From positions 142,591 through 206,590 of the IMG/VR virus record IMGVR_UViG_3300042514_000542: 64,000 bases of DNA. One strand, 5' to 3'. Shown here piece by piece: positions 3 to 64,000 of the stretch; the first letter of the stretch is position 1; each line of letters starts with the position of its first letter. The notes under the pieces were generated by a model, which was not told the DNA's origin, made no database searches, and saw only the letters and a list, made by a program, of their open reading frames with translations. The position numbers and the translations under genes are program-made.

Positions 3-704
3 TCAAATAAGACCATTTATACATTATCTGAAATGCTTCCATATTTATCCAATAAATACTCCTCTGGTGTATTGGATGAATTGAATACTAATGTGATTAG
101 GTTCGATATTGCCAACGATGTAATGTTTTTCGAAACCCCATCATACCTTATAATTGATAGGGTACTTATGAATGATGGAGTGTTTGTAGACCCCAGAACT
201 GCTCCGATAACGATAGTTACGGGTGATGAATATAGTAAAATATCCAATAGATTCAGAGTCAACCAAACAGTCTATTACTGTAATACTAAAACTCAAACAC
301 CCGCCATATCATCTAATAATTTTATAGTATATCCAGAGATATACGCATTCGATCTAGTTAATTTTAGAAATAATAAAATATTCCCACTCGATGAAGCCGA
401 TATAACTACCTTCTTTAGTATATCTGGTGATGGTGTTAGATATACCTATCTGGATAGTCCAATACTGACCTATAGTAGTAAAAACAATATCTTTAACCTC
501 TCATTTTTAATGAAAGACCAAAACGATATGCCTAGATTGCATCAGTTGGATTTCTATCTTAACCCAAACATATCATTTAGTTCCCATACTATTCACAATT
601 TTTCACCCTTCTCAAAGTCATACACCCTATCGTCTATAAACAATCTATCCCTATACTTATCTGGGGGTAATATAACATATGTTGGGGAAGAACTTATACT
701 ATGA
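3..704 (+). CDS. Virion structural protein, 5'-truncated (frame is open from the window edge)
   Basis: Frame is open upstream of ATG 33 to position 3. Beta-rich S/N/Y composition; first gene of a late structural run. Confidence 0.55.
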   Translation, partial: SNKTIYTLSEMLPYLSNKYSSGVLDELNTNVIRFDIANDVMFFETPSYLIIDRVLMNDGVFVDPRTAPITIVTGDEYSKISNRFRVNQTVYYCNTKTQTPAISSNNFIVYPEIYAFDLVNFRNNKIFPLDEADITTFFSISGDGVRYTYLDSPILTYSSKNNIFNLSFLMKDQNDMPRLHQLDFYLNPNISFSSHTIHNFSPFSKSYTLSSINNLSLYLSGGNITYVGEELIL

Positions 705-1195
705 ATACATATACGATAAATTTATCCTCGAATTCATCCAATTATAGTCAAAAACTATCAACCACACATTTTGATGATATTTCGAAACTTGAAATAATCC
801 CCCATAATCTTTTTAGTGGGTCAATTCCACTATATATAGTGATTGATTGGGGTGACGGTGTATCTGAGACTATAAATAATTCTATAGAATCTGATAGATT
901 GGCTGCAACAGTGTCCACCACTCATGATATGTTTTATAAAACATATAGCCATGAATATTATCCATCGACTAATTCACTATACAAACAATTAAGCGCACAA
1001 ATACTGGTCTTCTATATGAATGGTGAGTTTTCTTTTTTTGTAATACCTATTCAAATCAGAACATACGATTATTTCGAATCGATGTATGACATACATCTGA
1101 AACACACGAATATTCTACCCCTTGAATACAATCCAAAGGAACATTATTTCTCAACTGAGAGAGATGGTTACTTAATAGAACTACGAGGTAATTAA
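701..1195 (+). CDS. Putative virion protein with a PKD/Ig-like fold
   Basis: IDWGDG...YSHEY pattern typical of PKD-like domains; ATGA overlap with the upstream gene. Confidence 0.5.
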   Translation: MNTYTINLSSNSSNYSQKLSTTHFDDISKLEIIPHNLFSGSIPLYIVIDWGDGVSETINNSIESDRLAATVSTTHDMFYKTYSHEYYPSTNSLYKQLSAQILVFYMNGEFSFFVIPIQIRTYDYFESMYDIHLKHTNILPLEYNPKEHYFSTERDGYLIELRGN

Positions 1196-1203
1196 ATAAT
1201 ATT

Positions 1204-3573
1204 GTGGTATCTGTAGTCAACATATCTGCGATGAATTCCAATAGTTTAAGTTCTAACTTAAACGGATTTACATTTAAGCAATTTAAAAGAAACTATCCGG
1301 GAAATTATACTATAAATTTTGCCCATAGTTTATCGTCGTTTAATGATTTCCAAATTAAAAACTATACTAATTTCTACCTAACCAACGATTATAAAATTAG
1401 TGATATATTTGATTTCGATACAACTCCCCTAAAAGCATCTTCTATTCACACGCCCATATTATGGGGAAGTGGGTATTTATCATTTTCAGGTATAGACTCG
1501 GAAGCATATGCCTTAGCCAACAGATACCATGAGAGTAAGAATTACGGTGTTGCCATTATCGGTGAAACCGAATCTTCGCTCTCCATAGATATACTTGATA
1601 ATAATATATGTAATATTTATCACACCAAAAATTATCAAAAGTTTTTTCTTGTAGTTGATGATACAAATTCTTTGGTTTTTGTGAAACAGAATTTGTTATC
1701 AACTGACCCAATGGTGGTTAAACCTCAAGATTTTCATTATCTATTTTCTGAAAATGGTAATTTATTCTATCTGTTTAAAAAAACCTCAACTGGGACAAAT
1801 ATTGTGACCGTTGTTGATGGAGAACCGTTAGTCACTCCTGTTCTCAACAATAATACATCCTATATTAATTGGTTTTTTAAAATCGAAAAAAGTATCTACT
1901 CATACCCCACCAAAAATCTAAACACATCATTCATAACCTATGATACGAATAATATGTTGGATAAGGATAAGAGTGATTTCGAATTATCAAATAACCTACT
2001 ATTACATAAAAAAATATCTAGCGATGTTACAGACGTTATCATTCTAAAAAATCAATTATTACAGAATAATATATATTCATCTTCAAACAATCTATTATCT
2101 GGATTTAATAAGAATATATTTGTAAATGAGTTGAGAGAATATACCTCTATTGGAAATTCTATAGATTCAGAGACATCTGAGGCATTAGATTTGAATTATG
2201 TATTTTACAATAAACCTTATAAAATTGTAACTGGTAGTAATATATTTTATAGTTCGTCAAGCATAGAACCATTCACACAGTTGAATATAAATGATACAAA
2301 ATTTATAGAGGCTGGTGCATTTCCATACCTAACACCGGAATTTTCAGATAGAGTCTATCATCTATCAAATGATACCAATAACTATGATAATGGTCAACAT
2401 TTACTATGTACTTGGCTTTCTGGTTCACCCTTCCTCAATAATAGTGTATGGGTTGATAGGTATTATTATCCGAATCTAATCGAGAAATCCGAAGCATTAG
2501 CTGGATCGTCCACTCTATCTATAACGTATGATGATTATATTGAGGTTCTGGTGAATAGTAATTCACAGAAAAAGGAAAATATAAAAATACAGAAATTTTT
2601 TGACAAGAAAAGCGATCTAGTCTTTACCCCAAATCAAAAATACAACTATGAGAGAATCTCACAAATAGGTGTCGAATCGTTGTCGTCAAATTATTCATAT
2701 TGTCAGACAACTTTGAGTGCATACCCAACAAACTATTTCAAAGATATAAACACCAGTGGTGAAGTGAGTGTTGCATTTACGTTCTTTGGCGATGATTCAA
2801 GTTGGACAATTCAAAGTGATAGAGGATATATAGACTCTGGAATATCTATAATCAAAACTAATAACAAGATTACAATAACTTGTAAATTCTATGATGCCAC
2901 AACAAGAGATTTTAGCGGAGAATGGTTTTCCTTTAGTAAGACCCTAGATATCAAGAGCTTAAAGACTAATAATTTATGCGTATCGGTAGATGTTAAGTTG
3001 GGTATTGGATATTTCTTCTTTAATAATGAAATTGTCTACAATTTTACGCTACCCCAATATCAATTACTAGGTAAAGATATCATTCATGGAGACTTTAAAT
3101 ATATTAAAGAACAAACTTATGATTTATTATATGATGAAATAAATGGAATTTCAAATGTTTTTATAAATGATCTATACATAACCCCCGAACGAGCATTTTT
3201 AATTTTTACTCTTAATAGTAACGGGATTGACGATATTTATATAACACTACCATGTGGAATGAGGAACAGTGTTGATGATATAGCATACCTGAACAGTGTA
3301 TGTGGAACATCAACATTTAAATCAAACTATATTGATATTGAACTAAAAAATATTGGTATAACCGATGACTCAATCATAAATGATTTAAAATTAATTATCT
3401 CAGATATTGGTGAGAAGAATCTACCAGCATCAACGACCATCAATGATATAAAATTCAATGATTATAGGAAAATGAAACCCAATGCTGATACTATTACGGT
3501 TCCACCATATGCACTAGTGTATAATGGAAACCTTATTACATATAATGGTATTGTCATTATATCAACACCTTAA
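1204..3573 (+). CDS. Large virion structural protein, possible C-terminal ConA/LamG-like region
   Basis: 789 aa, beta-rich; TAAATA 5 nt before the GTG start. Confidence 0.55.
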   Translation: MVSVVNISAMNSNSLSSNLNGFTFKQFKRNYPGNYTINFAHSLSSFNDFQIKNYTNFYLTNDYKISDIFDFDTTPLKASSIHTPILWGSGYLSFSGIDSEAYALANRYHESKNYGVAIIGETESSLSIDILDNNICNIYHTKNYQKFFLVVDDTNSLVFVKQNLLSTDPMVVKPQDFHYLFSENGNLFYLFKKTSTGTNIVTVVDGEPLVTPVLNNNTSYINWFFKIEKSIYSYPTKNLNTSFITYDTNNMLDKDKSDFELSNNLLLHKKISSDVTDVIILKNQLLQNNIYSSSNNLLSGFNKNIFVNELREYTSIGNSIDSETSEALDLNYVFYNKPYKIVTGSNIFYSSSSIEPFTQLNINDTKFIEAGAFPYLTPEFSDRVYHLSNDTNNYDNGQHLLCTWLSGSPFLNNSVWVDRYYYPNLIEKSEALAGSSTLSITYDDYIEVLVNSNSQKKENIKIQKFFDKKSDLVFTPNQKYNYERISQIGVESLSSNYSYCQTTLSAYPTNYFKDINTSGEVSVAFTFFGDDSSWTIQSDRGYIDSGISIIKTNNKITITCKFYDATTRDFSGEWFSFSKTLDIKSLKTNNLCVSVDVKLGIGYFFFNNEIVYNFTLPQYQLLGKDIIHGDFKYIKEQTYDLLYDEINGISNVFINDLYITPERAFLIFTLNSNGIDDIYITLPCGMRNSVDDIAYLNSVCGTSTFKSNYIDIELKNIGITDDSIINDLKLIISDIGEKNLPASTTINDIKFNDYRKMKPNADTITVPPYALVYNGNLITYNGIVIISTP

Positions 3574-3642: not shown

Positions 3643-5409
3643 ATGAGCTACTTAAAATATACATCAGGTGAGTCTTTCACTCTAAATTCCGAAGATTATT
3701 CTGGTTATTTTAGAGTAGTTGGTGATACTGCATTTTCCGGTAGAATTGGTGGGCTTGAACTAACACCAAAAGATACTTTTATGTCTAAATTATATATTGA
3801 TTTATATAATTTAGATACTACCTATAAAAATATACAAAATCTCAATAATGTATATGCAAATACCCTAGACACTCTAGATAAGTTGGGTATAGATAGAATA
3901 TTAGAATCCCTTCATAATAATAATAAAATTTGTTATAAATCATTAGTATTATCAAATCCAACGGTATTCAAATACGATGAAACTGGGGGATTCTTCTATG
4001 GTTTATCTGCGACTGATGAATATAATGATAAAATATATCCGAAAAGGGGTGTTGTTAATATCAATACGTTGTCTGACTCTGATTATTGGTCGTTTTTAGA
4101 TAAAATTACAACAGGACACCATTTAGTTGATACATATGAAAACTTTAAATATATTTGCACTGATGGATTTGTCACGTATACTCTATCCGGTAATTTTAAT
4201 GGGAATATTCCTCTAACAAAAATTTCAGAATACCCCAACGTTCCATATTACGATAAAATTTACCATATTCATCACGATATCGATGATGGTAGAATGTTTT
4301 TCGTGAAAAATGATTATATTGAAATTTATGACGCATCTAATTTTGAATTATGCGATAATCTAATACTAGTTGATAGAATTAGTCTTATTCCGACAACAAC
4401 AACTGAGCATATTTGGAACACTTTAGACGTTAACTGGAATGATTTCCAACAACTTTGGAATGTTCTATTCGATACTATCAATAATAATACTCCTGAAACT
4501 ATTAAAATCGGTAAAAATCTAAGAACTGGTATAAGTAGTGATCTAACAACACTTAACCTGTATAACAAATACTCGAATAAAATTCATAGGCAAATTAGTT
4601 TAGCTGAATTGGATATACAATCCGTGATTGATGTAGATATCAACTCCAATAGTGACGATATTTTGATTCTATACCAGAATAAAAATTCTGATGTAATGAT
4701 ATGCTTTATTGATATCACCACACCCAATGTGAAAAAACTATCTAAGTTGGAATCACTTTTTGGAACTACTTATAATATTAAATTCACAGAGTTTGATTCC
4801 AATGTATTCTATATTTGGAATAGTAATGGATATCAAACTAGAAATATATCGAATTCTACATACCCATCCGGTAGATTGGAGTTAAATGATTTAAAATATC
4901 CAAAGGATTACATCTGGAACACCACCGATGAAATTTGGAATTTCCTAAATCTTAGATGGGATGTTAATGGATCTCTGGCGAACAGATACAATAATTTAAA
5001 TACATCGGTGACTATATCAAATAATAAAATGTATATGTTACTGCACAATATTGGCAGATTATATGTTATGAATCAAACAATGGATGATAGATTCTACTCC
5101 AATATACCCCTAAATTTACAATCATTCTTCACAGAATCTACATGTTCTGAATCATCCATTGGTATATATCTAAATACAAATATTGCGAATATCGCAAAAG
5201 ATACATTGAACATACTGAGCAAATCTAATGGGAGTTTCGATATATACGAGAGATCCGTATTCTTGAAACAAATTGATGACTTTATTCTGGACACTAATAA
5301 CTTATACCTAAATGGTAATGAAAACATCAATATCACAAGCATTCAAAGGATTTTACTCTCTATCCTAAATATACAGAGTAAAATCTTACCCGTATCTATT
5401 GAAAATTAA
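3643..5409 (+). CDS. Virion structural protein with two Trp-heptad motifs
   Basis: 588 aa; IWNTLDVNWNDFQQLWN and IWNTTDEIWNFLNLRWD; structural context. Confidence 0.5.
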   Translation: MSYLKYTSGESFTLNSEDYSGYFRVVGDTAFSGRIGGLELTPKDTFMSKLYIDLYNLDTTYKNIQNLNNVYANTLDTLDKLGIDRILESLHNNNKICYKSLVLSNPTVFKYDETGGFFYGLSATDEYNDKIYPKRGVVNINTLSDSDYWSFLDKITTGHHLVDTYENFKYICTDGFVTYTLSGNFNGNIPLTKISEYPNVPYYDKIYHIHHDIDDGRMFFVKNDYIEIYDASNFELCDNLILVDRISLIPTTTTEHIWNTLDVNWNDFQQLWNVLFDTINNNTPETIKIGKNLRTGISSDLTTLNLYNKYSNKIHRQISLAELDIQSVIDVDINSNSDDILILYQNKNSDVMICFIDITTPNVKKLSKLESLFGTTYNIKFTEFDSNVFYIWNSNGYQTRNISNSTYPSGRLELNDLKYPKDYIWNTTDEIWNFLNLRWDVNGSLANRYNNLNTSVTISNNKMYMLLHNIGRLYVMNQTMDDRFYSNIPLNLQSFFTESTCSESSIGIYLNTNIANIAKDTLNILSKSNGSFDIYERSVFLKQIDDFILDTNNLYLNGNENINITSIQRILLSILNIQSKILPVSIEN

Positions 5410-5431
5410 ACAATCACGTTAAATAAACATA

Positions 5432-6253
5432 ATGAGTACTTTCACTAATCAATTCATTTTAAACACATACGGTGGTATATTACACTCAGATGGAGAGTTG
5501 AATATTTCCCAGAAATCGATCATGTATGACGGATTCGGTAACGAATCCGCATTAACATTGGGTCGAAAAAATAATGGGGCTAGTGTTAGTGGTAATTTAT
5601 CATCAACATCTTTAAATGTCGGACAATTAACTTTCCCGTCTCTTTCAAGTGATGTCAATAACGTGTTGATACAAAAGGCCGATGGAATTGTGGATTTTTC
5701 TGACACCATACCATCATCTCTACTCGCAGATCTAAACCCAAATCCAGAAAATGTATATAATACTATAAAGTCCATTACTGTAAATTCTAAAGGTCTTACG
5801 ACAAAAGTTGATACTTGGGGGAGTTCAAATAATACCATAACATCCACAACCTATAAAGAAAATGCTGGAACACCATTTTCAGTAGTCACCGTAACTGCCG
5901 ATGTATGGACAAAGGTGTTTTTAACGGACGCTATACCACCAGAAGATGTTTCTAGCGTTAAAGCTGTTATACTATACGTTGAACCTACAGGTAATTTAGC
6001 CGCATATAGAAAATCATATACGCTAGTTGCATCTCCAAATCAAAGTGATGTGTATCCAATATATCAAGTCATTGGTGGTGAAGATGCGGGGGGTGGAAAC
6101 GATACTTACGGTATAGGTGTTCAATGTTCCGTCCGTATTGGAGGAATTGGAACAAATTCAATATACATATACCTTAAAAACCCCATCACAAAAAGTAACT
6201 CCGATAATGCGACTTACTCATTTAATGTTCATTTAATAGCTTATCAACGATAA
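5432..6253 (+). CDS. Fibre-like virion protein
   Basis: SITVNSKGLTTKV fibre-type repeat; TAAATA late promoter 6 nt upstream. Confidence 0.5.
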   Translation: MSTFTNQFILNTYGGILHSDGELNISQKSIMYDGFGNESALTLGRKNNGASVSGNLSSTSLNVGQLTFPSLSSDVNNVLIQKADGIVDFSDTIPSSLLADLNPNPENVYNTIKSITVNSKGLTTKVDTWGSSNNTITSTTYKENAGTPFSVVTVTADVWTKVFLTDAIPPEDVSSVKAVILYVEPTGNLAAYRKSYTLVASPNQSDVYPIYQVIGGEDAGGGNDTYGIGVQCSVRIGGIGTNSIYIYLKNPITKSNSDNATYSFNVHLIAYQR

Positions 6254-6254: not shown

Positions 6255-7277
6255 ATGCCAAATATAGAAATAGCTAAGTTAAAAACAAGAAGAGGCACGA
6301 ATAATCAAAGAAAACGTGTCATCTTTGACCAAGGGGAAATTGTATCTACCGTTGATACTAATAGATTATTCCTTGGAACCGGAACGTTGAGTGGCGGTGT
6401 TGTGATAGGTTCGAAAGTTCATCAACCTATCACTAATTATTCATCATTATCAAATATCGCAGCCGAAGTTGGTGATTTAGCATATGCTAATAATATATTT
6501 TACCAGTTAACGGCATCACCACCATCAAATATCAACAATTGGATGTCTACTGGAATTAAACTAGACAGTGGATTATTCTCGTATGATTCAGATAATACAC
6601 TTAGATTAAATCTATCCTCTCTATCGGCAGTGCATATCAATCCACTAACCGTATCGAATGGAATTAAGATATCTGGTGGGATTCTTCAAAGCAATTTTAA
6701 TACAAAATCTTTAGAAATTTCATCATATCAATTATCCCTAAAGGCTAATGGTATAGATGAAAGAGAGCTAAACTCGACAACTTTTGGTTACGGAATTAGT
6801 GGGGGATCAGGAACTAAAGTAGTTCTGGACGTAAATCCATCACAGTTTCGTTTCAATGGTGATACCCTAAATCTCACGAATTCTACATCCATATCCGCAG
6901 TAGATAATTCATCATTAATTCTAAGCTCTGGTGTAATATCAGTAAATAATAATGGGGCTTCTGGTAGTTATCAATGGCCAAGAATTGTAGTGGATACTTT
7001 CGGTAGAGTGACTACAGCAGAATCATCAATATTAGATGTTTTAACAGGTAATGCATCTCTATCAAGCTATAACCGTAATAATTCACTCTCCGCAATATAT
7101 AATGGTGATTCTATGGGATTATCATCTATAGCAATAACGAGATTTACTGCACTATCATCCGATGGAACAAGCATTATACATCTTTCATCTGCTGGGTTTA
7201 TAACATTCGAAGGAGGGACCACAACAAGGAGTGGAACTTCCGTTGGAAGATTCGCAATCCCAATTTATAGATATTAA
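6255..7277 (+). CDS. Tail fibre-like protein with an Mtd-N/hyaluronidase-type N-terminal domain
   Basis: RRGT...QGEIVSTVDTNRLFLGTG N-terminus; IVVDTFGRVTTA fibre repeat. Confidence 0.65.
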   Translation: MPNIEIAKLKTRRGTNNQRKRVIFDQGEIVSTVDTNRLFLGTGTLSGGVVIGSKVHQPITNYSSLSNIAAEVGDLAYANNIFYQLTASPPSNINNWMSTGIKLDSGLFSYDSDNTLRLNLSSLSAVHINPLTVSNGIKISGGILQSNFNTKSLEISSYQLSLKANGIDERELNSTTFGYGISGGSGTKVVLDVNPSQFRFNGDTLNLTNSTSISAVDNSSLILSSGVISVNNNGASGSYQWPRIVVDTFGRVTTAESSILDVLTGNASLSSYNRNNSLSAIYNGDSMGLSSIAITRFTALSSDGTSIIHLSSAGFITFEGGTTTRSGTSVGRFAIPIYRY

Positions 7278-8961: not shown

Positions 8962-9309
8962 ATGTCTTCTTCTTCTTCTTCGTCTTCCAGTTCTTCCACA
9001 CCTCCAGTAACATTACCACCACCGGTAACACCACCACCGGTAAATTTTGAGTGTACTCCGTGTTATCCACCTATTCCATCCACACCAGAATTCCCACCGA
9101 ATTTTACACTACCGACAACCAAAACAGCACAGCCAGAATTTATTATAACAACACCACCCCCACCAGTTAACCCTCTAACTATAAGTATAAACATAACTAC
9201 TACTTCAACTACAACAACTCAAATAGTGACACCACCAGTGACACTACCACCACTGATAACCCCATCAGTGAAAGAATGTAATGATGGTTGCAATGCTCTA
9301 AATTTTTAG
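8962..9309 (+). CDS. Mucin-like Ser/Thr/Pro-rich late protein
   Basis: Poly-Ser start, repeated (T)PPVT(L)PP, Thr runs, two Cys pairs; TAAATA 6 nt upstream. Confidence 0.6.
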   Translation: MSSSSSSSSSSSTPPVTLPPPVTPPPVNFECTPCYPPIPSTPEFPPNFTLPTTKTAQPEFIITTPPPPVNPLTISINITTTSTTTTQIVTPPVTLPPLITPSVKECNDGCNALNF

Positions 9310-22266: not shown

Positions 22267-22271
22267 ATCTG

Positions 22272-47571: not shown

Positions 47572-47622
47572 ATAAACAATTAACCATCGGTACAATATTG
47601 GGTTTTAGAAAGAAAATATAAT

Positions 47623-50003: not shown

Positions 50004-50018
50004 TAGTTTACGTAACTA

Positions 50019-50774: not shown

Positions 50775-50871
50775 ATCGGAGATATTTACTCGTAACAATA
50801 ATTAATCAATCTAAAATCTCTTTATTAAATCTAGTATATTGACATATAAATAAACCAAATTAAATACCACT

Positions 50872-56252: not shown

Positions 56253-56312
56253 ATGGGATTATAATTTTCTACAATGGTCAGAAAATTATATATAATTAAG
56301 TTAAATAATTAT

Positions 56313-57416
56313 ATGGCAATAGATTTAGGCGATAATCCAGTGGGAATCCCCCCCACAGCAGGTGAGGCGACCCAAATTAGAACGGTTTTAGGGTTGGGTA
56401 ATGTTAACAATACATCTGATCTAGATAAACCGATCTCGACAGCCACACTATCGGCACTTAATTTAAAAGAGACTCCCGCTGGAGCAGCCGCGCAAATCGC
56501 AGCATCCGCCCTTACTGACGCACAAGTGGGCAACCAAGTCGGTAACGAGCTTGTGGCTACTTTTTCAGCGTTGGCCGCTGTATCCACACTAAATCCCGGC
56601 TGTCTGGTGTTGGCCACTTCTCGTCCGAATGCTGCTAACGTCATAATCAGGACATCAACTGGCTACGCTCGACCTATTCTCGCTGCCACTGGAGCATTGT
56701 CCACTCAGGTTGGGACAGGGGTTGTTGGCGCACAGTTAACAATCCCCATTGCTGCTGGTGCTGCCATGCGTGCAATGTCGGTAATCAGTGTTGCGAGCGG
56801 TGGCTCTGTCCGTAGTGGTAACATCACTGACATTAATATTTCTGATGTGGGCTTACACAGTATGCCCACATCGCACTTAACAGCTTTGACTGCGCTGACT
56901 GTTATTAACAGTAGGTTGCCCAGCTTTGACGGGTCTGGGCTTACTTCGCTCACAATCCTAGCCTTAAACAGCAACAATCAACTCCGCTCCTTTACCAAGG
57001 GAACAGGATTAGAATCACTGTTGAGCCTAACGTTAAATTCTAATAGACTGACAACGTTTTCGGGAGTGGGACTTAGCGTATTAAGAAATCTCTTTTTAAA
57101 TAATAACCAACTCACAACTTTTGACGCTACTGGATTAGGTGAGCTTAGGACATTAAACGTTTCAAACAACACAACCCTGAATAGCTTTGTTTTGTCCAGT
57201 GTCCCAACCCTAGTTTCTCTTCGTAATGAGGATATTTCGACTTTTGCAGTGGTTGCAAATGGTTGCTCTTTAAGTGCGCAAGCAATCAATGACTTCTTCA
57301 CTGCACTCCCGCCAGCAACAAACGGAGCAGCAACTCTAGTCTTCAACGGAAACCCAGGAAGTGCAACTGCCAATGCATCCATTGCCACCTCCAAAGGTTA
57401 CACTGTATCCCTCTAA
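56313..57416 (+). CDS. Fibre-anchored leucine-rich-repeat protein
   Basis: LGLGNVNNTSDLDKPISTA fibre repeat; at least four LxxLxLxxN repeats; elevated GC; TAAATA 5 nt before MAIDLG. Confidence 0.7.
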   Translation: MAIDLGDNPVGIPPTAGEATQIRTVLGLGNVNNTSDLDKPISTATLSALNLKETPAGAAAQIAASALTDAQVGNQVGNELVATFSALAAVSTLNPGCLVLATSRPNAANVIIRTSTGYARPILAATGALSTQVGTGVVGAQLTIPIAAGAAMRAMSVISVASGGSVRSGNITDINISDVGLHSMPTSHLTALTALTVINSRLPSFDGSGLTSLTILALNSNNQLRSFTKGTGLESLLSLTLNSNRLTTFSGVGLSVLRNLFLNNNQLTTFDATGLGELRTLNVSNNTTLNSFVLSSVPTLVSLRNEDISTFAVVANGCSLSAQAINDFFTALPPATNGAATLVFNGNPGSATANASIATSKGYTVSL

Positions 57417-58491: not shown

Positions 58492-60318
58492 ATGGCAGGT
58501 ATTCAGAATAATCCTAATAATAGGAGTAATTTATCCAGAGACGGTAAATCTGGAATGTATGATAGGTCGATGCAGACTTATCTCAAAAACCGTGTTCCAT
58601 ATAATTATAGTGTTTTAGATTCGGATGAATCCAAAAATACAAAATATAAATATTTCCAAAAAGTTGGAATGCGTAGACCAGAGGCTCTTGCTAAGAACTC
58701 TGTAACTCTCAATAATCCATATAATAACACAGCATTCTCTGCAATCGAAAGAGATAAGACTTTCGGTGATATTATGTATGCAAGCGCATCTGAAGATAAA
58801 CCGGGACGCTTGAGGGATTATAGATCTATGGCAGCATTTTCCGAAATTGCTGATGCTCTAGATGAAATTTGTGATGAGACAATTAATCCAGATGAAAATG
58901 ATGAGATTGTCCTTTTAAAATTTAAAAATACGGATTTGGAGTCGGATAAGAAAAGCGAAATCCAAGAAGAATGGTATAGGTATATTGAATATTACGACTT
59001 ACATAATAATGGATGGCAATACTTTAGACAATTCTTAACTGAGGGTGAATTGTTTTTTGAACAAATAATTCATGATGAATTTACCAATGAGGGTGTTTTA
59101 GGCATTATTAATATGCCAGCAGACCTCATTGATCCGGTATATTCAAATATTCAAAATATGTTGGTTAAGGGATTCCTATATCAAAAACCAATCTTCGATC
59201 CCAATGATCCCAAGAAAGTGGAAAGATATGAACCAATTCCTTTAGAGGAAAACCAAGTAGTTTATATTAATAATTCTGCATATAATGACACAAAGGATTT
59301 CATTATACCATTTATAGAAAATTGTCGTAGAGCTTATAGACAATTATCGATGATCGAAGATGCTGTAGTTATTCATAGAATGGTTCATGCACCTCTAAGG
59401 TTTGTATTTAATGTTGACGTTGGTACACTTCCTGTACCACAAGCAGAATCATACTTGAGAAAATTACAAGCACAGTATTGGTCATCTAAAACATTCGACT
59501 CTGACCAAGGGGATATTGTTAAAAAATATAGCCCACAATCAACATTGGATAGTTATTGGTTCGCCAAGAGACAAGGACAGGAACCGACCACAGTTAGTGA
59601 AATCGGTGGAACTCCGGGTCTTGGAGAGCTTCATGACTTGATGTTCTTCATCAAAAAACTTTACAGATCGCTTAAGGTTCCGACTTCAAGATTAGACCCC
59701 GAAGATTCGTTTCGTGATGGGACTGATATTCTTAGAGAAGAATTAAAGTTTGCCACAATGATCATGAGACAACAGAAGAAATTTGCTTCTGGCCTCAAGA
59801 GAGGATTTATAACACACCTCAAACTTCGTCATATGTTTGAGCAATATGATTTAACAGAACAAAATATTAATGTTGTATTCAATGCACCATCAAATTTCTA
59901 CGATCTTAGAAATAATCAGAAGATGGAACTTAAGGTTAATTCTTATAATAATCTTATGTCAACTCAAAAGGTTTCTGATACATATGCCAAGAAAAAAGTT
60001 CTTGGTTGGAAAGACAAAGATATTCTAGCAGATCGTGAATTGCGTAGAAAAGACGCAGAATTAGATTGGGAATTACAACAGATTATGGCAATGGGTCCAA
60101 GCTGGAAAGAGCAGTTATTACAACAAGCCCAAGGTGGCGCACCCGAAGCTGGTGATGATCTAGGTGGTATGGGCGGCGGAATGGGTGCTGGCGGTGCTGG
60201 AGGTTTACCACCTTCGTTCGGTGGTGGTGAAGCAGCAATTGGTGGTGATGAAACACTTCCACCTAATGCTGGTGTTGCGCCAGAAATGCCTATGGTTCCA
60301 GAAGAACCTCCAGCTTAA
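58492..60318 (+). CDS. gp20: Portal protein (gp20-like)
   Basis: YRSMA, ALDEI, QLSMIEDAVVIHR..APLR.VFNVDVG, LYRSLKVPTSRL, REELKF. Confidence 0.96.
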   Translation: MAGIQNNPNNRSNLSRDGKSGMYDRSMQTYLKNRVPYNYSVLDSDESKNTKYKYFQKVGMRRPEALAKNSVTLNNPYNNTAFSAIERDKTFGDIMYASASEDKPGRLRDYRSMAAFSEIADALDEICDETINPDENDEIVLLKFKNTDLESDKKSEIQEEWYRYIEYYDLHNNGWQYFRQFLTEGELFFEQIIHDEFTNEGVLGIINMPADLIDPVYSNIQNMLVKGFLYQKPIFDPNDPKKVERYEPIPLEENQVVYINNSAYNDTKDFIIPFIENCRRAYRQLSMIEDAVVIHRMVHAPLRFVFNVDVGTLPVPQAESYLRKLQAQYWSSKTFDSDQGDIVKKYSPQSTLDSYWFAKRQGQEPTTVSEIGGTPGLGELHDLMFFIKKLYRSLKVPTSRLDPEDSFRDGTDILREELKFATMIMRQQKKFASGLKRGFITHLKLRHMFEQYDLTEQNINVVFNAPSNFYDLRNNQKMELKVNSYNNLMSTQKVSDTYAKKKVLGWKDKDILADRELRRKDAELDWELQQIMAMGPSWKEQLLQQAQGGAPEAGDDLGGMGGGMGAGGAGGLPPSFGGGEAAIGGDETLPPNAGVAPEMPMVPEEPPA

Positions 60319-60608
60319 TCACAAAAGCTTACACAGTTGAACGCTGAACTATAATAATACTTAGTTCCAGAATTCGATTGTAAATTTAACCCAGAATCAC
60401 TCGGAACATTACATTCTAGAAAATAATATTCAGTCGGTATATTGGTTGTAACTTGGGGATAATTATCTTCTTGTCCCCATAAAATGAATTCATTCGCAGA
60501 TATACGGTAATATCCAGTGGATTTATTGGAGTTTATATTCACCCCTGATGTCGATGGAACACCACACGACAGTTCGTAATAAACGGAGCCAGAATTACTT
60601 TCATACAT
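60315..60608 (-). CDS. Small late protein with an internal Cys-containing repeat
   Basis: YYELSCGVPSTSGVNINSN and YYFLECNVPSDSGLNLQSN; TAAATA 5 nt upstream. Confidence 0.65.
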   Translation of the reverse strand: MYESNSGSVYYELSCGVPSTSGVNINSNKSTGYYRISANEFILWGQEDNYPQVTTNIPTEYYFLECNVPSDSGLNLQSNSGTKYYYSSAFNCVSFCD

Positions 60609-60636: not shown

Positions 60637-61788
60637 ATGAGTTCACTTTGCACAATTACGCCAGTTTCGGCGTTTATGTCTACAAATCTAAGTTCGAAAA
60701 TTGACTGTTTTCAAGAATTGGGTGCTAGAATTCTTAGAATGCTTGGACACCCTATGATCAATGTTGAGCTACATCCTGATCAATTATATGACTCTATTTC
60801 AATGGCGTGTGAGTTTTTCACAAAGTATGCAGGACACACTAAGGAGTATTTGGTATTCAACTCTGATCTCTACGAAAGAGATAAAGGTATTAGATTGGAC
60901 TATTTATATACAGTCTCGAATACTGGGTTTACATTATCTCAAAAACTGAATGATCAAACTATTCCAAATCCAGACTTTGAATTGAAATTTAGAGAGAATT
61001 TATATGTGTCGTTATCAGACATCTCATATAATCATTTTTTAACTTCATCTGCATTATCTGCGTCGATTCCAACTGATGGTATCTCAACAATGCAGATATT
61101 AGATGAAAGTTCTTTTGCTCAATTAACCGCTTTTGATGCTAATTTGAGAAACATGTTTCGCATTTCACCTATGAAACCCTTCAATGTTCAATGTGAACAG
61201 GTGGAAAATGTGAGAACTATTAATAACATGTTTGATTATGATATTATGGATTATCGTAAAGTTATAGATGTTATTGATTTTGAAGAGGGTTCAAGTTCTG
61301 GTATTAGTCAATTATTTTCGATGGAACAGACCTTAGCTCAACAAACTTTCTATAGTTATGCTATGGGTAACTTTGGATTCGATTTGCTGTCTTGGCATAC
61401 TGTTAAAGATTGGCAAGATACCCGTGAGAAACTTTTGGCGACTCGTAGAGATATACATTTTGATAATAGAACGCAGTATTTGAAGTTTTATCCACAACCT
61501 AAAGATACGTCATCATTTGTGGGGGTGTTAGAATGCTATGTGGAAAGACCATTGAGAGATATTATTAAAGAAAAATGGGTTCTAGATTATTCTATCGCAC
61601 TATCTAAAGTTATGTGGGGAAGGATTCTAACAAAAATTAATGGTGTGACTATGCTTGGTGGCGGGACTCTAAATGGTGCTGAAATTTTAGCAGAAGGAAA
61701 TGCTGATAAAGAACGTCTTGAAACGATGCTGATTGAAGGCACGGGTGGGACAGCTTCGTATGAACCTATCATGATGTTCATAAGGTAA
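60637..61788 (+). CDS. gp13: Neck protein (gp13-like)
   Basis: ILRMLGHPMINVEL..DQ; WVLDY..A..K..WG..L.K..G..MLGGGTLNG. Confidence 0.9.
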   Translation: MSSLCTITPVSAFMSTNLSSKIDCFQELGARILRMLGHPMINVELHPDQLYDSISMACEFFTKYAGHTKEYLVFNSDLYERDKGIRLDYLYTVSNTGFTLSQKLNDQTIPNPDFELKFRENLYVSLSDISYNHFLTSSALSASIPTDGISTMQILDESSFAQLTAFDANLRNMFRISPMKPFNVQCEQVENVRTINNMFDYDIMDYRKVIDVIDFEEGSSSGISQLFSMEQTLAQQTFYSYAMGNFGFDLLSWHTVKDWQDTREKLLATRRDIHFDNRTQYLKFYPQPKDTSSFVGVLECYVERPLRDIIKEKWVLDYSIALSKVMWGRILTKINGVTMLGGGTLNGAEILAEGNADKERLETMLIEGTGGTASYEPIMMFIR

Positions 61789-61793: not shown

Positions 61794-62309
61794 ATGATAT
61801 ACCCAAAACAAATTCCCAAATTTGTAAAAGATGTTCAATATCAGGAATTACATCCGAAAGTTGGAAAATATTTATATAGATATAAGACATTAGATGATAT
61901 CGAGTTGGTATTTCATAATTCATTAATACCACAAAATCAAACTATAACATTTAGTGATGAACAAGGTCGAATCTGGTTGACCATCACACACAAATCTATA
62001 ATAATATCCAAGAATTATGCTTGGAATGGATGTTCACCAAAAAGATGGTGGCTGGTTTGGTGGGGAACTCCCGATTTTGAGGAAACCCTTATTGCGTCAT
62101 TATTTCATGACGCATTAGTTCAGTTTGTATACACTGAACATTTTCCCTTGTCGAGATATATATGCGACAACATATTCAAAAATATATTATATATGAAAAA
62201 ATTTAAATTTGTAGATATATATTATATTGGAGTTAGAGTAGGTAGTGAAGTATTACCAATCAATAAATATGTTGGGAAATCCAACTTGACAACACTATCT
62301 CAAGACTAA
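61794..62309 (+). CDS. DUF1353-like protein
   Basis: YAWNGCS, ASLFHDAL, YYIGVR. Confidence 0.6.
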   Translation: MIYPKQIPKFVKDVQYQELHPKVGKYLYRYKTLDDIELVFHNSLIPQNQTITFSDEQGRIWLTITHKSIIISKNYAWNGCSPKRWWLVWWGTPDFEETLIASLFHDALVQFVYTEHFPLSRYICDNIFKNILYMKKFKFVDIYYIGVRVGSEVLPINKYVGKSNLTTLSQD

Positions 62310-62319
62310 ATATATTTCA

Positions 62320-64000
62320 ATGAAGTTGTTTAGCGAAAAGGTGAAGCACACCTTAACTAACTCTTCTCAAAACATCTTACAGGTTGAAGCTTTCCAAGAA
62401 ATCTTTTTCGGTGTTTATGAGATAGAGATAAACAAGTCCAAATATCCTGTTGAAAAGATTTCTGAATATGATGGAAATCCAGTGGTGTCTGTGCCTGTTA
62501 CGGTTGAGGGTGTTAAGAGAGAATACCCATTTGTATTGTTGGAGGGTAAATTTGAGTTATTATTCAATGAGGATAATAAGCTAAACGATGAGTATGAGAT
62601 AGTTCAGGACACTATTAAAGATATTCTACTTGCGGAAACTGTCGAGGAAATTGAAGAAGTTATCAGTATTCCAGAGGTTGTCGATAATAGAGGGAAAATT
62701 CTAAAACAAATTCAAAAGGCTAAAAAAGATGCCTACAATGCTTTACAGTTAGAGAAAACCAAGAATCTAAAAGAAATTCAAGTTGAAGCTGCTAAAAAGA
62801 ATAAACTTTTAAAAGAAACCTTGGATGTTGCTAGGGAGAATCTTGTAGAGGAATTTGTATCTGTATCCAAGAAGATACGAGAAGAATTGGTTGATGGAAA
62901 TGATAAACGTTTTGATGAAATTAAAGAGACTATTGATAATAAGATCAATGATCTAGCTTCTAATCTTTCAGAATCTTTGAAGAAAGACTTTAAACAATCT
63001 TCTAAAATCTTTGATGATAGTATTAAGAAATTAGTCAAGGAATCATATAATTCTTTACAACCCAAAATAGATAAAGAACTTAAGGCTATTGCGACGGATA
63101 TTGTCGAGAAAGTAAGTTCTATTGAGAAAGAACTTGATAGAAAACTTGAGGATAAGGCTGATATAACCCTTATTGAAAATGTCGAGGGAGAACTGAACGC
63201 AGTATCCAAAGCTAATATTGAGCTTAATGATAAGATCAACAAAGGTGTCAATAAGGCACTTTCAAGAGTTGGTAATGCCGATAAGAAAATTGATGAACTA
63301 ACCATAGCCTTATCCGAAGAAGTTGAAAGTAAGATTTCAAAGGCTGAAGAGAACATTACGAATTACTATACAGAGAAACTTAAAATGTTGGAAGAAAAAA
63401 CTTTCGACATTACAGAAGAAACTAGAAAATATATAATCGAGTTGGTCACAGAATCGCGTAATAATCTTGTCGAAGAGATACGCAAAATTAAAGATGAAAA
63501 ACCAATCGAATATATTGTCGAATCTAAAGGCAAGAAACAATCAATAAACTCCGATGATTTAGTAAAGGATTTTGATAAAAAGATTAATTCAAAGATTGAT
63601 AACGAGGTTACAAGACTTCGTAAATATATTGCGGTATATTCGGGTGGTGGTTCCGTAGCAATGCAATTTGCAGATGGGGGAACCATGAATGGTGATTTGA
63701 ATGTTAATGGTAACTTAACAGTGGTTGGGTCTATCAGTGCATCCCAATATCTTGGAATTCCTTATCCATCAGAGAATGATACATTAGATGTCGTAACATC
63801 TAGAGGCAATATCACCAATAATTCAATAAAGGTTAATAATCTTTCCGCCAACTCTGCTCATCTCACATCAGTAATAGAGGCATCTGCGTTTGTTACCACA
63901 GGTGGCACATCTTCGGATTTTGTGAAAGGAGATGGATCTCTGGATAGTAATACTTATATAACAGAAGAAGCCTTTTTATCAAATCTTGTTTTATATCCCA
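62320..64000 (+). CDS. Long coiled-coil fibre-like virion protein, 3'-truncated (not in the ORF track)
   Basis: Open frame from MKLFSEKV to the window end; K/E-rich coiled coil, then SGGGSVAMQFADGGTMNGDLNVNGNL; TAAATA 7 nt upstream. Confidence 0.75.
   Translation, partial: MKLFSEKVKHTLTNSSQNILQVEAFQEIFFGVYEIEINKSKYPVEKISEYDGNPVVSVPVTVEGVKREYPFVLLEGKFELLFNEDNKLNDEYEIVQDTIKDILLAETVEEIEEVISIPEVVDNRGKILKQIQKAKKDAYNALQLEKTKNLKEIQVEAAKKNKLLKETLDVARENLVEEFVSVSKKIREELVDGNDKRFDEIKETIDNKINDLASNLSESLKKDFKQSSKIFDDSIKKLVKESYNSLQPKIDKELKAIATDIVEKVSSIEKELDRKLEDKADITLIENVEGELNAVSKANIELNDKINKGVNKALSRVGNADKKIDELTIALSEEVESKISKAEENITNYYTEKLKMLEEKTFDITEETRKYIIELVTESRNNLVEEIRKIKDEKPIEYIVESKGKKQSINSDDLVKDFDKKINSKIDNEVTRLRKYIAVYSGGGSVAMQFADGGTMNGDLNVNGNLTVVGSISASQYLGIPYPSENDTLDVVTSRGNITNNSIKVNNLSANSAHLTSVIEASAFVTTGGTSSDFVKGDGSLDSNTYITEEAFLSNLVLYP

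What the first reader, a model, noticed from the sequence alone, without database searches (positions are those of the whole stretch)
3..64000. Recurrent [LIVF]-S-[AGS] motif (LSA/LSG/LSS/ISA) in exterior virion proteins: possible O-glycosylation sequon
Seen: the motif recurs densely in unrelated structural ORFs. ORF 6255 has TLSGG, NLSSLSAV, KISGG, GISGG, SISAV, ILSSG, SLSSY, SLSAI, GLSSI, ALSSD and HLSSA. ORF 7281 has ILSGG, ALSAN, SLSAT, VLSSN and WLSAG. The gp15 C-terminal extension has VSSG, SLSAN, LISAF, YLSSN, TISAY, SLSSG and NLSGG. gp13 has PVSAF, NLSSK and ALSAS, and ORF 62320 has SISAS and NLSAN. It is much sparser in the portal, internal-protein candidates and enzymes, though not absent (the helicase has ISS and ISA). 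Inference: convergent accumulation of one tripeptide across different folds suggests a modification signal read by one of the phage GTs.
Basis: partly seen in the sequence, partly recalled or inferred. Interest (0 to 1): 0.8.

Follow-up and report, generated by a model that had tools for sequence, protein, structure and literature searches.

The report
Leu-Ser-small motif in phage tail proteins
The baseplate, fibre and neck proteins of this uncultured T4-like phage and its whole clade carry four to six times more Leu/Ile-Ser-Ala/Ser/Gly tripeptides than chance predicts. The excess is real and specific to this clade. It could mark sites where the phage's many sugar-adding enzymes modify serine, but nothing here shows that any sugar is attached.

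Summary

- **Enrichment.** In 12 tail, baseplate and neck ORFs, [LIVF]S[AGS] occurs 69 times against 29.5 expected (z 8). LS[AGS] occurs 39 times against 9.5 (4.1x, p 6e-13). The other 66 ORFs sit at 1.0-1.1x.
- **Robustness.** The excess survives shuffles within 20-residue windows. LSA and LSS are the top two of all about 8000 tripeptides in an unbiased scan.
- **Specificity.** It needs Ser (Thr 1.0x) and is directional (reverse motif 1.1x). It acts at the protein level, because the codons at motif sites are diverse.
- **Replication.** Relatives show the same pattern: 5.7x in 120 homologues of the fibre and 4.5x in 120 homologues of ORF 1204.
- **Controls.** T4, PSTCR6, S-CAM1 and 469 ORFs from 79 other T4-like loci (1.03x) show none.
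- **Conservation.** The motif Ser is conserved more than other Ser (71% against 45%).

- ORF 6255 and ORF 7281 are paralogues, not unrelated.
- Val does not belong in the motif.
- The clade's major capsid protein is not enriched, so "exterior virion" should read "tail periphery and neck".

The glycosylation reading stays untested. For it:

- About 11 glycosyltransferases are encoded in the window.
- A GT2 gene ends the fibre operon, here and in two relatives.
- A mucin-like Ser/Thr/Pro protein sits next to that GT2.

Against it:

- The excess sites are conserved in position.
- Many lie at strand ends or helix caps.
- Non-target proteins do not avoid the motif.

The parts
33..704 (+). C-terminal 223 residues of an 890-residue baseplate/fibre-module protein that starts upstream of the window. 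It has 5 motif sites.
   Evidence: 5 against 1.2 expected. Full ORF in L006:1778-4450: LS[AGS] 7 against 1.2.
701..1195 (+). 164-residue module protein with 3 motif sites.
   Evidence: 3 against 0.9. Homologues in L007, L020 and L022 each have 1-2 LS[AGS] against 0.1-0.4.
1204..3573 (+). 789-residue baseplate-periphery protein with 10 motif sites. A LamG/ConA-like fold is a lead only.
   Evidence: 10 against 4.5, LS[AGS] 6 against 1.3. 120 homologues: LS[AGS] 554 against 124.6. Atlas lead.
3643..5409 (+). 588-residue module protein with 4 motif sites, not significant on its own. A beta-propeller fold is a lead only.
   Evidence: 4 against 2.05, p 0.14. Atlas lead.
5432..6253 (+). 273-residue protein with 4 motif sites. 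It sits where a relative has a Gp10_C-domain protein.
   Evidence: 4 against 2.2. PF21939 on the syntenic gene of the P0064 contig.
6255..7277 (+). 340-residue tail-fibre protein: Mtd_N-like N-terminus followed by beta-hairpin repeats. It has 13 motif sites, the densest in the window.
   Evidence: 13 against 4.45, p<5e-4. AlphaFold model pLDDT 83.5. Foldseek hits to reovirus sigma1, Mtd and adenovirus shaft. 120 homologues at 5.7x.
7281..8141 (+). 286-residue paralogue of ORF 6255 with 8 motif sites.
   Evidence: 30% identity over 226 residues to ORF 6255. 8 against 2.5.
8143..8862 (+). 239-residue Ser-rich (15%) module protein with 4 motif sites.
   Evidence: 4 against 2.5 here. Homologues: 5 against 0.7-0.8 LS[AGS] in L007 and L020.
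8962..9309 (+). 115-residue mucin-like protein: a run of 12 Ser, then Pro/Thr-rich sequence and a Cys-containing C-terminus. It has no LS[AGS] site and lies just before the GT2 gene.
   Evidence: Sequence. A counterpart with the same C-terminal ...C..C..LNF ending is in L020.
9320..10150 (+). GT2-family glycosyltransferase. It starts 10 nt after ORF 8962-9309, at the end of the fibre operon.
   Evidence: PF00535 E 1e-8. A GT2 gene lies just after the fibre module in L020 and in the P0064 contig.
55158..56252 (+). gp15 tail-sheath stabiliser. All 7 motif sites lie in the clade-specific C-terminal extension (residues 215-364, nt 55800-56252).
   Evidence: PF16724 on residues 4-214. N-domain 0 against 0.5; extension 7 against 1.3. 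4 sites invariant in 9 homologues. Extension absent from cultured phages.
56274..57416 (+). 380-residue leucine-rich-repeat protein with 5 motif sites, not significant.
   Evidence: LRR_4 and LRR_8 just below Pfam's gathering cut-offs. 5 against 3.6.
60315..60608 (-). 97-residue Ser- and Cys-rich protein with internal [LS][SA]N.GT.YY repeats. Its homologues carry 1-3 LS[AGS].
   Evidence: Conserved at 42-62% identity in relatives. LS[AGS] 2 against 0.4 and 3 against 0.3 in the L013 and L015 homologues. An unmatched 98-aa Ser-rich ORF at the same spot in L014 has 4 against 0.5. Sequences.
60637..61788 (+). gp13-like neck protein (head-tail adaptor) with 3 motif sites.
   Evidence: phrog_211. 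3 against 1.75 here. Motif Ser conserved 17 of 18 across 6 orthologues.
62320..63999 (+). Large structural protein, 560 residues read to position 63999, still open at the end of the window and contig. It has 3 motif sites.
   Evidence: Homologues: LS[AGS] 7 against 1.3, 14 against 4.2 and 7 against 1.9.
43329..50798 (.). Sugar-modification cluster. It holds a dNMP-kinase-like gene, GT2-type genes at 44054, 44850, 45554, 49326 and 50019(-), a fused FkbM methyltransferase+GT2 at 46300, an FkbM methyltransferase at 47623 and a GT11 at 48234. The acceptor is unknown.
   Evidence: Pfam hits. TTGACA-16-TAAATT at 43295-43322, upstream of the cluster.
21568..22299 (-). A further glycosyltransferase (Glyco_tranf_2_5).
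   Evidence: PF13712 E 1e-13.

Best explanation
The tripeptide [L>I,Y,F]-S-[A>S>G], usually flanked by a small or polar residue before it and N/G/D after it, is a conserved recognition element. It sits in the peripheral tail, baseplate, fibre and neck proteins of a large uncultured clade of about 200-kb T4-like phages.

The most likely reader is a phage-encoded glycosyltransferase acting in the cytoplasm. It would O-glycosylate the central Ser on folded or folding tail proteins, and other phage GTs and sugar methyltransferases would then extend the glycan. The GT2 gene at the end of the fibre operon (9320-10150) is the leading candidate for the first step.

**Shown**
- The motif, its specificity, its restriction to this clade and its conservation.
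- The GT inventory and its synteny with the fibre module.

**Inferred**
- That the Ser is modified at all.
- That the modification is a sugar.
- Which enzyme does it.
For: 1. **Clade-restricted excess.** The 4-6x excess appears in at least eight protein families that are unrelated by BLAST and by profile comparison. It is replicated in relatives: L007 36 against 6.5, L020 39 against 8.9, L022 33 against 8.4. It is also replicated in 120+120 homologues.
2. **Absent elsewhere.** T4, PSTCR6 and S-CAM1 show no general excess. Neither do 469 ORFs from 79 other T4-like loci, including their Ser-rich ones: 195 against 189, and 48 against 49. Generic structural chemistry therefore cannot be the cause.
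3. **Graded, sequon-like specificity.** Ser is required and Thr is not accepted. The motif is directional, and both flanking positions show ranked preferences.
4. **Conservation.** Motif Ser is conserved in 71% of aligned positions, against 45% for other Ser in the same proteins. Ser-to-Thr replacement is rare.
5. **Sharp boundary.** The enriched baseplate/fibre ORFs are directly followed by the un-enriched GT2 and by replication genes.
6. **Sugar machinery.** About 11 GTs and 2 FkbM methyltransferase domains are present. A GT2 gene follows the fibre module in three genomes. A mucin-like Ser/Thr/Pro protein sits just before it.
7. **Precedents.**
   - Bacteroidota have a three-residue O-glycosylation motif that is itself enriched in a clade-specific way (PMC12871550).
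   - Burkholderia PglL prefers Ser about 500-fold over Thr (PMC8423747).
   - Mycobacteriophage virions are glycosylated (Freeman 2023, as cited in PMC12619734).
Against: - No glycan has been observed, and no tool here can test for one.
- The excess is carried by a few old, position-conserved columns. About 7 columns carry it in the ORF 1204 family and about 14 in the ORF 6255 family. Low-occupancy sites are near the chance rate. A structural role would give the same picture.
- In the confident ORF 6255 model, 4-5 of 13 sites are the strand end of a hairpin before a [GS]G turn, and 3 are helix N-caps. N/G/D is favoured at +3.
- The major capsid protein and other head proteins of a clade member are not enriched.
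- A tripeptide carries little information, yet cytoplasmic phage proteins do not avoid it (13 against 13.7).
- The main GT cluster starts with a dNMP-kinase-like gene behind a sigma-70-like promoter. That would also fit DNA or host-glycan modification.
- No known glycosyltransferase is reported to read this motif.
Confidence: 0.4

Rival explanations
1. Structural punctuation. A hydrophobic anchor, a Ser cap, a small residue and then N/G/D would form a conserved strand-terminating or helix-capping device in the beta-rich peripheral proteins of this clade. Triple-beta-spiral-like hairpin turns in the fibres would be one case. No modification would be involved.
For: - AlphaFold model of ORF 6255: repeated EEEE--EEEE hairpins with h-S-[GS]-[GY] at the turn (sites 139, 155, 223; also 45 and 181), and LS[AS] at three helix N-termini.
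- Foldseek's best hits are beta-spiral fibres: reovirus sigma1 and the adenovirus shaft.
- The excess sites are conserved in position.
- N/G/D is preferred at +3.
- In S-CAM1, a similar local excess comes from a 40-residue internal repeat that contains LSG.
- Ser rather than Thr, and the directionality, are natural for caps and turns.
Against: - Physics is universal, yet T4 fibres and baseplate, PSTCR6, most S-CAM1 fibres and 469 ORFs of other T4-like phages show 1.0-1.5x.
- The motif occurs in hairpin ends, helix caps, coil and mid-strand, and in proteins with different folds that are unrelated at profile level.
- Only about 16% of sites have G at +3, so the beta-spiral turn explains a minority.
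Confidence: 0.3
2. The motif is read by some other clade-specific factor, not a glycosyltransferase. Candidates are a fibre or baseplate assembly chaperone, or an enzyme that adds a different group to Ser, such as phosphate or an acyl group.
For: The same clade restriction, Ser conservation and target-class specificity as for the leading explanation. Many ORFs in the window have no assigned function.
Against: No candidate chaperone, kinase or acyltransferase was identified in the window. The only enzyme class that is both abundant and syntenic with the targets is the glycosyltransferases.
Confidence: 0.12
3. Chance, composition, post-hoc motif choice or a DNA-level signal.
Against: - Global and 20-residue local shuffles both leave a large excess. 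The reversed motif serves as a control with the same composition.
- The unbiased tripeptide scan survives Bonferroni correction: LSA p 3.5e-8 times 8000.
- All six Ser codons and five of the six Leu codons occur at motif sites.
- The excess is replicated in relatives down to 36% identity.
Confidence: 0.02

Closest known systems
Bacteroidota general O-glycosylation at D-(S/T)-(L/I/V/T/A/S/M) (PMC12871550)
   Same: It is a three-residue O-glycosylation motif. The review calls it the only known sequence-defined bacterial O-glycosylation. The motif is itself enriched in the target protein class, only in the clade that has the system.
   Different: That system needs Asp at -1, accepts Thr and works in the periplasm by transferring a lipid-linked glycan en bloc. 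Here D[ST][AILMTV] is not enriched (23 against 19). Thr is excluded, and the targets are cytoplasmically assembled phage proteins. No oligosaccharyltransferase or flippase domain was seen among the ORFs scanned.
Mycobacteriophage virion glycosylation (Freeman et al. 2023, as summarised in PMC12619734)
   Same: Phage-encoded glycosyltransferases decorate virion proteins.
   Different: There the glycans sit on the C-termini of capsid and tail-tube subunits. Here the capsid protein is not enriched. The candidate sites are internal tripeptides in baseplate, fibre and neck proteins, and glycosylation itself is unproven.
Burkholderia/Neisseria PglL O-glycosylation (PMC8423747)
   Same: It strongly prefers Ser over Thr and favours small residues (Ala) next to the Ser.
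   Different: It is a periplasmic oligosaccharyltransferase with no rigid sequon, acting in disordered Ala/Pro-rich regions. Here the sites have a hydrophobic residue at -1 and lie in ordered, confidently modelled regions.
Triple beta-spiral fibre shafts (adenovirus fibre, reovirus sigma1); repeat description from my own knowledge
   Same: ORF 6255 is modelled as stacked beta-hairpins with hydrophobic-x-hydrophobic-S-G-G turns, and its best fold matches are sigma1 and the adenovirus shaft.
   Different: The fold matches are weak (TM 0.16). This explains at most 4-5 of the 13 sites in one family. It explains none of the sites in gp15, gp13, ORF 1204 and the others.
Chlorovirus PBCV-1 capsid glycosylation by virus-encoded GTs and an FkbM-type methyltransferase domain (my own knowledge, not checked here)
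   Same: The virus encodes many GT-A-type enzymes and sugar methyltransferases. A fused methyltransferase+GT protein exists here at 46300-47571.
   Different: PBCV-1 glycans are N-linked to the major capsid protein of a eukaryotic virus. No homology to those enzymes was shown here.

Membership tests
Virus-encoded virion protein glycosylation system | The virus encodes its own glycosyltransferases. | tested here: met
   About 11 GT-domain ORFs and 2 FkbM methyltransferase domains. Four of the GT hits (30617, 44054, 44850 and the LRR-unrelated weak GT1_4) fall below Pfam's gathering cut-offs.
Virus-encoded virion protein glycosylation system | A glycan is covalently attached to virion proteins. 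| not testable with these tools
   This needs mass spectrometry or glycan staining of virions. The clade has no cultured member in the phage collection.
Virus-encoded virion protein glycosylation system | GT genes are genetically linked to, or co-expressed with, their structural targets. | tested here: inconclusive
   GT2 9320-10150 follows the fibre module on the same strand with a 10-nt gap. A GT2 gene sits there in L020 (opposite strand) and in the P0064 contig (same strand). The main cluster lies behind a sigma-70-like promoter. Expression timing was not measured.
Sequon-directed O-glycosylation (Bacteroidota type) | A short motif is enriched in the target protein class, only in the clade that has the system. 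| tested here: met
   4.1x in tail and neck proteins, 1.0x in other proteins of the same phage, and 1.03x in 469 ORFs of other T4-like phages.
Sequon-directed O-glycosylation (Bacteroidota type) | The motif is D-(S/T)-(hydrophobic/A/S/T). | tested here: not met
   D[ST][AILMTV] 23 against 19.0; DS[AGS] 5 against 5.8.
Sequon-directed O-glycosylation (Bacteroidota type) | The glycan is transferred in the periplasm from a lipid carrier by an oligosaccharyltransferase. | tested here: not met
   No oligosaccharyltransferase, flippase or initiating-transferase domain was found among the roughly 50 of 78 window ORFs scanned with Pfam. Phage tail proteins assemble in the cytoplasm (established knowledge).
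Triple beta-spiral / beta-hairpin fibre repeat | Repeated strand-turn-strand units with Gly or Pro at the turn, and a fold match to known shafts. | tested here: inconclusive
   Five EEEE--EEEE hairpins lie in residues 137-230 of ORF 6255. Foldseek sigma1 E 8e-4 but TM 0.16. The model is a monomer only.
Leucine-rich repeat (LxxLxLSxN) | A hydrophobic residue two positions before the Leu, and an LRR profile match. | tested here: not met
   Position -2 is hydrophobic in 39% of sites against a 36% background. Only ORF 56274 shows LRR profile hits, and it is not significantly enriched.
Lipobox [LVI][ASTVI][GAS]C | An invariant Cys directly after the tripeptide, close to an N-terminal signal peptide. 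| tested here: not met
   Only 1 of 69 sites is followed by Cys, and the sites are spread along the proteins.

The most novel reading that the evidence does not exclude
A large uncultured clade of about 200-kb T4-like aquatic phages runs its own cytoplasmic, Ser-specific O-glycosylation system. The system has a defined three-residue sequon, [L/I]-S-[A/S/G]. It decorates baseplate, fibres, the gp15 extension and neck, but not the capsid shell. This would be the first sequon-directed protein glycosylation described for a bacterial virus. It would be only the second sequence-defined O-glycosylation motif in the prokaryotic world.
Probability: 0.3. Interest if true: 0.85.

Novelty: new variant of a known kind. 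Interest (0 to 1): 0.62.

Why it matters
If the motif is a glycosylation sequon, glycosylated phage tail proteins could be predicted from sequence alone across hundreds of metagenomic genomes. It would give a function to the large glycosyltransferase clusters common in aquatic T4-like phages, whose role is unknown. It would also yield a compact Ser-specific tag and enzyme pair for glyco-engineering.

Glycan-coated fibres and baseplates would bear on host recognition, on resistance to proteases and grazers, and on virion stickiness in water.

If the motif proves purely structural, it is still a clade-wide, strongly conserved signature. It marks tail-periphery proteins that have no database annotation, which helps in annotating this uncultured group.

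Tried and rejected
- **Composition.** Whole-protein and 20-residue local shuffles both leave a 2.2-2.3x excess (4x for Leu).
- **Beta-strand in/out alternation.** The reversed motif, which needs the same local composition, is not enriched (1.07-1.16x). Neither is hSh.
- **DNA-level motif.** All six Ser codons and five of the six Leu codons occur at motif sites, and no nine-base string dominates.
- **Paralogy or internal repeats.** Only 6255/7281 are related. hhalign gives probabilities below 1% between the fibre family and gp15, ORF 1204 and ORF 62320. Dropping 6255 and 7281 leaves 25 against 7.2. In S-CAM1, by contrast, the one enriched protein is explained by a 40-residue repeat.
- **A generic property of T4-like tail proteins.** Rejected by T4, PSTCR6, S-CAM1 and the 469-ORF control.
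- **LRR, lipobox and Bacteroidota sequon.** None fits.
- **T4 late promoter TATAAATA, to time GT expression.** Matches are at the chance level, 13 against 12.4. The sigma-70 scans are also at chance overall, so only the intergenic hits are mentioned, and only as hints.
- **Reaching the capsid gene of this same contig.** A walk from the gp4 gene did not return the contig. The capsid block of clade member L023 was used instead.
- **gp15 structure.** The model is poor (pLDDT 51.8) and was used only loosely.
- **Other dead ends.**
  - PDB sequence searches for three GTs found only generic GT-A glycan-elongating enzymes.
  - The phage collection has no close relative: no near-identical DNA for the baseplate/fibre region 1204-10150, no protein match for the fibre, and no match for the gp15 extension.
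  - Cluster look-up gave no names or host.
- **Solvent exposure of the sites.** This could not be computed because model coordinates are not returned.

Full report
**What the window is.**
- It is the last 64 kb of a 206,590-bp IMG/VR contig, IMGVR_UViG_3300042514_000542.
- GC content is about 33%.
- It belongs to a distant T4-like myophage:
  - the portal is 26-28% identical to cyanophage gp20;
  - there is a gp15 sheath stabiliser (PF16724), a gp13-like adaptor and a phrog_1158 protein (annotated tail assembly chaperone) that I take to be gp14-like from its position;
  - replication genes include gp32, DnaB-like and UvsW-like helicases, RecA/UvsX, PolB and gp46/47-like proteins.
- The baseplate/fibre region 1204-10150 has no near-identical DNA in 50,697 phage records. 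The fibre protein and the gp15 extension have no match there either.
- The clade is large in metagenomes: 223 and 585 homologues for two of its tail proteins, many on contigs of 200-216 kb.

**Checking the observation.**
- I called 78 non-overlapping ORFs and counted [LIVF]S[AGS].
- Against 2000 composition-preserving shuffles per protein:

| ORF | observed | expected | p |
|---|---|---|---|
| 6255 | 13 | 4.45 | <5e-4 |
| 7281 | 8 | 2.5 | 5e-4 |
| gp15 (55158) | 7 | 1.56 | <5e-4 |
| 33 | 5 | 1.2 | 0.0025 |
| 1204 | 10 | 4.5 | 0.007 |

- Pooled over 12 tail, baseplate and neck ORFs (4589 residues): 69 against 29.5 (z 8.1). Shuffles confined to 20-residue windows still expect only 32.0.
- The 66 other ORFs give 48 against 43. 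The 11 GT/MT ORFs give 6 against 6.7, and the portal 1 against 1.5.

**Is the motif specific, or chosen after the fact?**
- In an unbiased scan of every tripeptide in the structural set, LSA (14 against 2.0, p 3.5e-8) and LSS (18 against 4.75) rank first and second. SLS and ALS come next, and LS is the top dipeptide.
- The middle position must be Ser. LS[AGS] is 4.1x, while LA, LT, LG and LN[AGS] are 0.4-1.7x.
- The first position prefers L (4.1x), then Y, I and F (1.7-2.0x). V is 0.8x, and K, H and W are absent.
- The third position prefers A (6.9x), then S (3.8x) and G (2.6x).
- [LIVF]T[AGS] (1.04x) and the reversed motif [AGS]S[LIVF] (1.16x) are not enriched. The reversed motif has the same composition requirement.
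- Flanks add information: a small or polar residue at -1 in 68% of sites (background 38%), and N/G/D at +3 in 46% (background 21%).
- All six Ser codons and five of the six Leu codons are used at the sites, so the signal is in the protein, not the DNA.

**Independence of the carriers.**
- By all-against-all BLAST only ORFs 6255 and 7281 are related: 30% over 226 residues, with a shared Mtd_N-like N-terminus.
- Profile comparison of the 95-sequence ORF 6255 family with gp15, ORF 1204 and ORF 62320 gives probabilities below 1%.
- Without 6255 and 7281, LS[AGS] is still 25 against 7.2 (p 2e-7).
- Language-model leads suggest different folds: LamG-like for ORF 1204 and a beta-propeller for ORF 3643. 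These are leads only.

**Replication in relatives.** Loci from 11 related contigs (gp15 54-72% identical) and two more found through fibre homologues show the same partition.
- Enriched: gp15 homologues (2-4 against 0.2-0.4), gp13-like proteins and ORF 62320 homologues (7 against 1.3; 14 against 4.2; 7 against 1.9).
- Enriched whole modules (LS[AGS]): L007 36 against 6.5, L020 39 against 8.9, L022 33 against 8.4.
- Not enriched: all nine portal homologues (0 sites), helicases and GTs (about 0), and the rest of L020 (2 against 1.8).
- 120 homologues of ORF 6255 total 917 against 160 (5.7x), and every member is at least 1.7x on [LIVF]S[AGS].
- 120 homologues of ORF 1204, down to 36% identity, total 554 against 125 (4.5x). 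There is no decline with divergence, and control motifs sit at 0.7-0.9x.

**Controls outside the clade.**
- Structural regions of T4 (including gp34-37, gp12 and gp6-11), Providencia phage PSTCR6 and cyanophage S-CAM1 give overall ratios of 1.0-1.5.
- The one enriched S-CAM1 protein carries a roughly 40-residue internal repeat with a fixed LSG.
- Across 469 distinct ORFs (152,196 residues) from 79 other T4-like loci, LS[AGS] is 195 against 189 (1.03x). No ORF reaches p<0.01, and the 86 Ser-rich ORFs give 48 against 49.
- The null model is therefore well calibrated, and the excess is specific to this clade.

**Which virion proteins carry the motif?**
- Not all exterior ones. In clade member L023 the head block (gp4, prohead protease, two scaffold-like proteins, major capsid protein) has 1 against 1.2. 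In the more distant L024 it has 1 against 2.0.
- Within gp15, the T4-homologous N-domain has 0 against 0.5. The clade-specific C-terminal extension has 7 against 1.3.
- The target class is the tail periphery and neck: baseplate, fibres, the gp15 extension, gp13 and the large ORF 62320 family. It also includes small Ser-rich proteins such as 60315-60608(-), whose homologues hold 1-3 sites inside short [LS][SA]N.GT.YY repeats.

**Evolutionary pattern.**
- In orthologue alignments the motif Ser is identical in 71% of comparisons. Other Ser in the same proteins score 45%, and all other residues 59%.
- Only 6% of aligned residues at motif Ser positions are Thr, against 11% at other Ser positions.
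- In the gp15 extension four of seven sites are invariant across nine homologues, while the third residue toggles among A, G and S.
- In the two large families about half of all sites sit in a few columns with at least 50% occupancy. Columns below 20% occupancy hold roughly the chance number per sequence.
- So the excess consists of old, conserved sites, not rapid turnover.

**Structural context.**
- ORF 6255 models well (pLDDT 83.5). It has an Mtd_N-like N-terminus, five stacked beta-hairpins and a C-terminal beta domain.
- Its best fold matches are reovirus sigma1, Mtd and the adenovirus shaft. The matches are weak, at TM about 0.16.
- Of its 13 sites, 4-5 are the last strand residues before a [GS]G hairpin turn and 3 are N-caps of short helices. 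One ends a strand, three are in coil and one is mid-strand.
- The gp15 model is poor overall (51.8). Its extension is modelled moderately (53-84) as a beta-sandwich, with sites at strand starts and ends.
- Coordinates are not returned, so solvent exposure could not be computed.

**Glycosyltransferase context.**
- Pfam finds GT2-type domains at 9320, 21568(-), 44054, 44850, 45554 (with a Glyco_transf_7C domain), 46300 (fused to FkbM), 49326 and 50019(-). It also finds a GT11 at 48234, a weak GT1 at 30617(-) and a second FkbM methyltransferase at 47623. The hits at 30617, 44054 and 44850 fall below Pfam's gathering cut-offs.
- GT2 9320-10150 starts 10 nt after the last small ORF of the fibre module, on the same strand. 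A GT2 gene sits directly after the fibre module in L020 as well. In the 213,620-bp contig of P0064 it is followed by a GT25/GT61 protein.
- Just before it lies ORF 8962-9309: a run of 12 Ser, then Pro/Thr-rich sequence and a Cys-containing tail. This is a mucin-like composition, and it is conserved in L020.
- The main cluster (43329-50798) begins with a dNMP-kinase-like gene and is preceded by TTGACA-16-TAAATT. A perfect TTGACA-17-TATAAT precedes the helicase at 52294. The cluster may therefore be early, and it could serve DNA or host-glycan modification, as discussed in PMC12619734.

**Interpretation.** Chance, composition, DNA-level signals, paralogy and generic beta-structure chemistry are excluded. 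What remains is a clade-specific constraint on a short, directional, Ser-centred motif in one functional class of proteins.
- **Leading explanation (0.4).** A clade-specific factor reads the motif, and a phage glycosyltransferase is the best candidate because of its abundance and synteny.
  - The logic has a precedent in Bacteroidota, whose three-residue O-glycosylation motif is enriched only in that phylum's non-cytoplasmic proteins.
  - Ser-over-Thr discrimination has a precedent in Burkholderia PglL.
- **Main rival (0.3).** A conserved structural cap or turn device. The positional conservation and the strand-end and N-cap locations support it. The absence of the motif from all other T4-like tail proteins weakens it.
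- **Third possibility (0.12).** A different trans-acting reader or a different Ser modification.
- Nothing here demonstrates a glycan.

**Verdict.** The finding is a well-defined and experimentally testable lead in an uncultured phage clade.

Noticed in passing
window 8962-9309 (+): A 115-residue mucin-like protein lies between the fibre module and the GT2 gene. It has a run of 12 Ser after the initial Met, then Pro/Thr-rich stretches and a Cys-containing C-terminus (...ECNDGCNALNF). A counterpart with a similar ending occurs in L020, where the repeat region is masked or unassembled.
   Followed up: partly
window 43329-50798, plus 9320-10150, 21568-22299(-) and 30617-31825(-): The sugar-enzyme load is unusually heavy. 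There are about 11 glycosyltransferase-domain ORFs, two FkbM methyltransferase domains (one fused to a GT2) and a GT11 fucosyltransferase-like gene. The main cluster opens with a dNMP-kinase-like gene. Relative L020 also carries an RmlD/epimerase-type gene near its fibre module.
   Followed up: partly
window 16422-17180(-), 18079-18963(-), 35750-36487(-): Three paralogous GIY-YIG + NUMOD3 homing-endonuclease genes (35-47% identical) are scattered among the replication genes. Relatives L012, L011 and L019 have extra or longer genes at some of these places. For example, the helicase ORF is 838-849 residues there against 537 here, which hints at mobile insertions.
   Followed up: no
window 55800-56252 (gp15 residues 215-364): gp15 carries a roughly 150-residue C-terminal beta-rich extension. 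It is conserved across the clade but absent from all 415 gp15 matches in cultured phages. One relative (L011) extends it by a further 240 residues or so.
   Followed up: partly
window 56274-57416 (+): A leucine-rich-repeat protein is encoded between gp15 and the portal gene. Several relatives lack it: in L012, L013 and L019, gp15 is followed directly by the portal.
   Followed up: no
window 60315-60608 (-): A small Ser- and Cys-rich ORF lies antisense between the portal and gp13 genes. It is conserved at 42-62% identity in relatives and is built of three short [LS][SA]N.GT.YY repeats. A similar small Ser-rich ORF lies near the capsid gene in L023 (16094-16468). It may be a decoration protein.
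   Followed up: partly
window 52258-52286, 43295-43322, 38343-38370(-), 42246-42273: Intergenic sigma-70-type promoters with an exact TTGACA precede the helicase (a perfect 12 of 12 match), the GT cluster and two early-looking blocks. Structural genes instead have [CT]TAAATA 6-8 nt before the start codon and no Shine-Dalgarno-like sequence. The exact T4 late motif TATAAATA is at the chance level.
   Followed up: partly
window 33-704 and 62320-63999: Both end ORFs are truncated. ORF 33-704 is the tail of an 890-residue ORF that starts upstream of the window (L006:1778-4450). ORF 62320 is still open at the end of the window, which is also the contig end. Its homologues are 514-1684 residues long.
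   Followed up: yes
L003:24890-31282 (Synechococcus phage S-CAM1, KU686194.1): A 2130-residue hypothetical protein contains a dozen or so copies of a roughly 40-residue repeat, G.G....LSG[AT][AT]E. It lies near heptose-pathway and carbamoyltransferase genes.
   Followed up: partly
window 41749-42249 (+) and 51881-52261 (+): Two small non-tail ORFs also exceed expectation. ORF 41749 has 4 sites against 0.58 and a Lys/Pro-rich tail. ORF 51881 has 2 against 0.14, with CLSAF and a C-terminal KLSA. Most ORF 51881 homologues keep 1-2 LS[AGS]. Their function is unknown.
   Followed up: no
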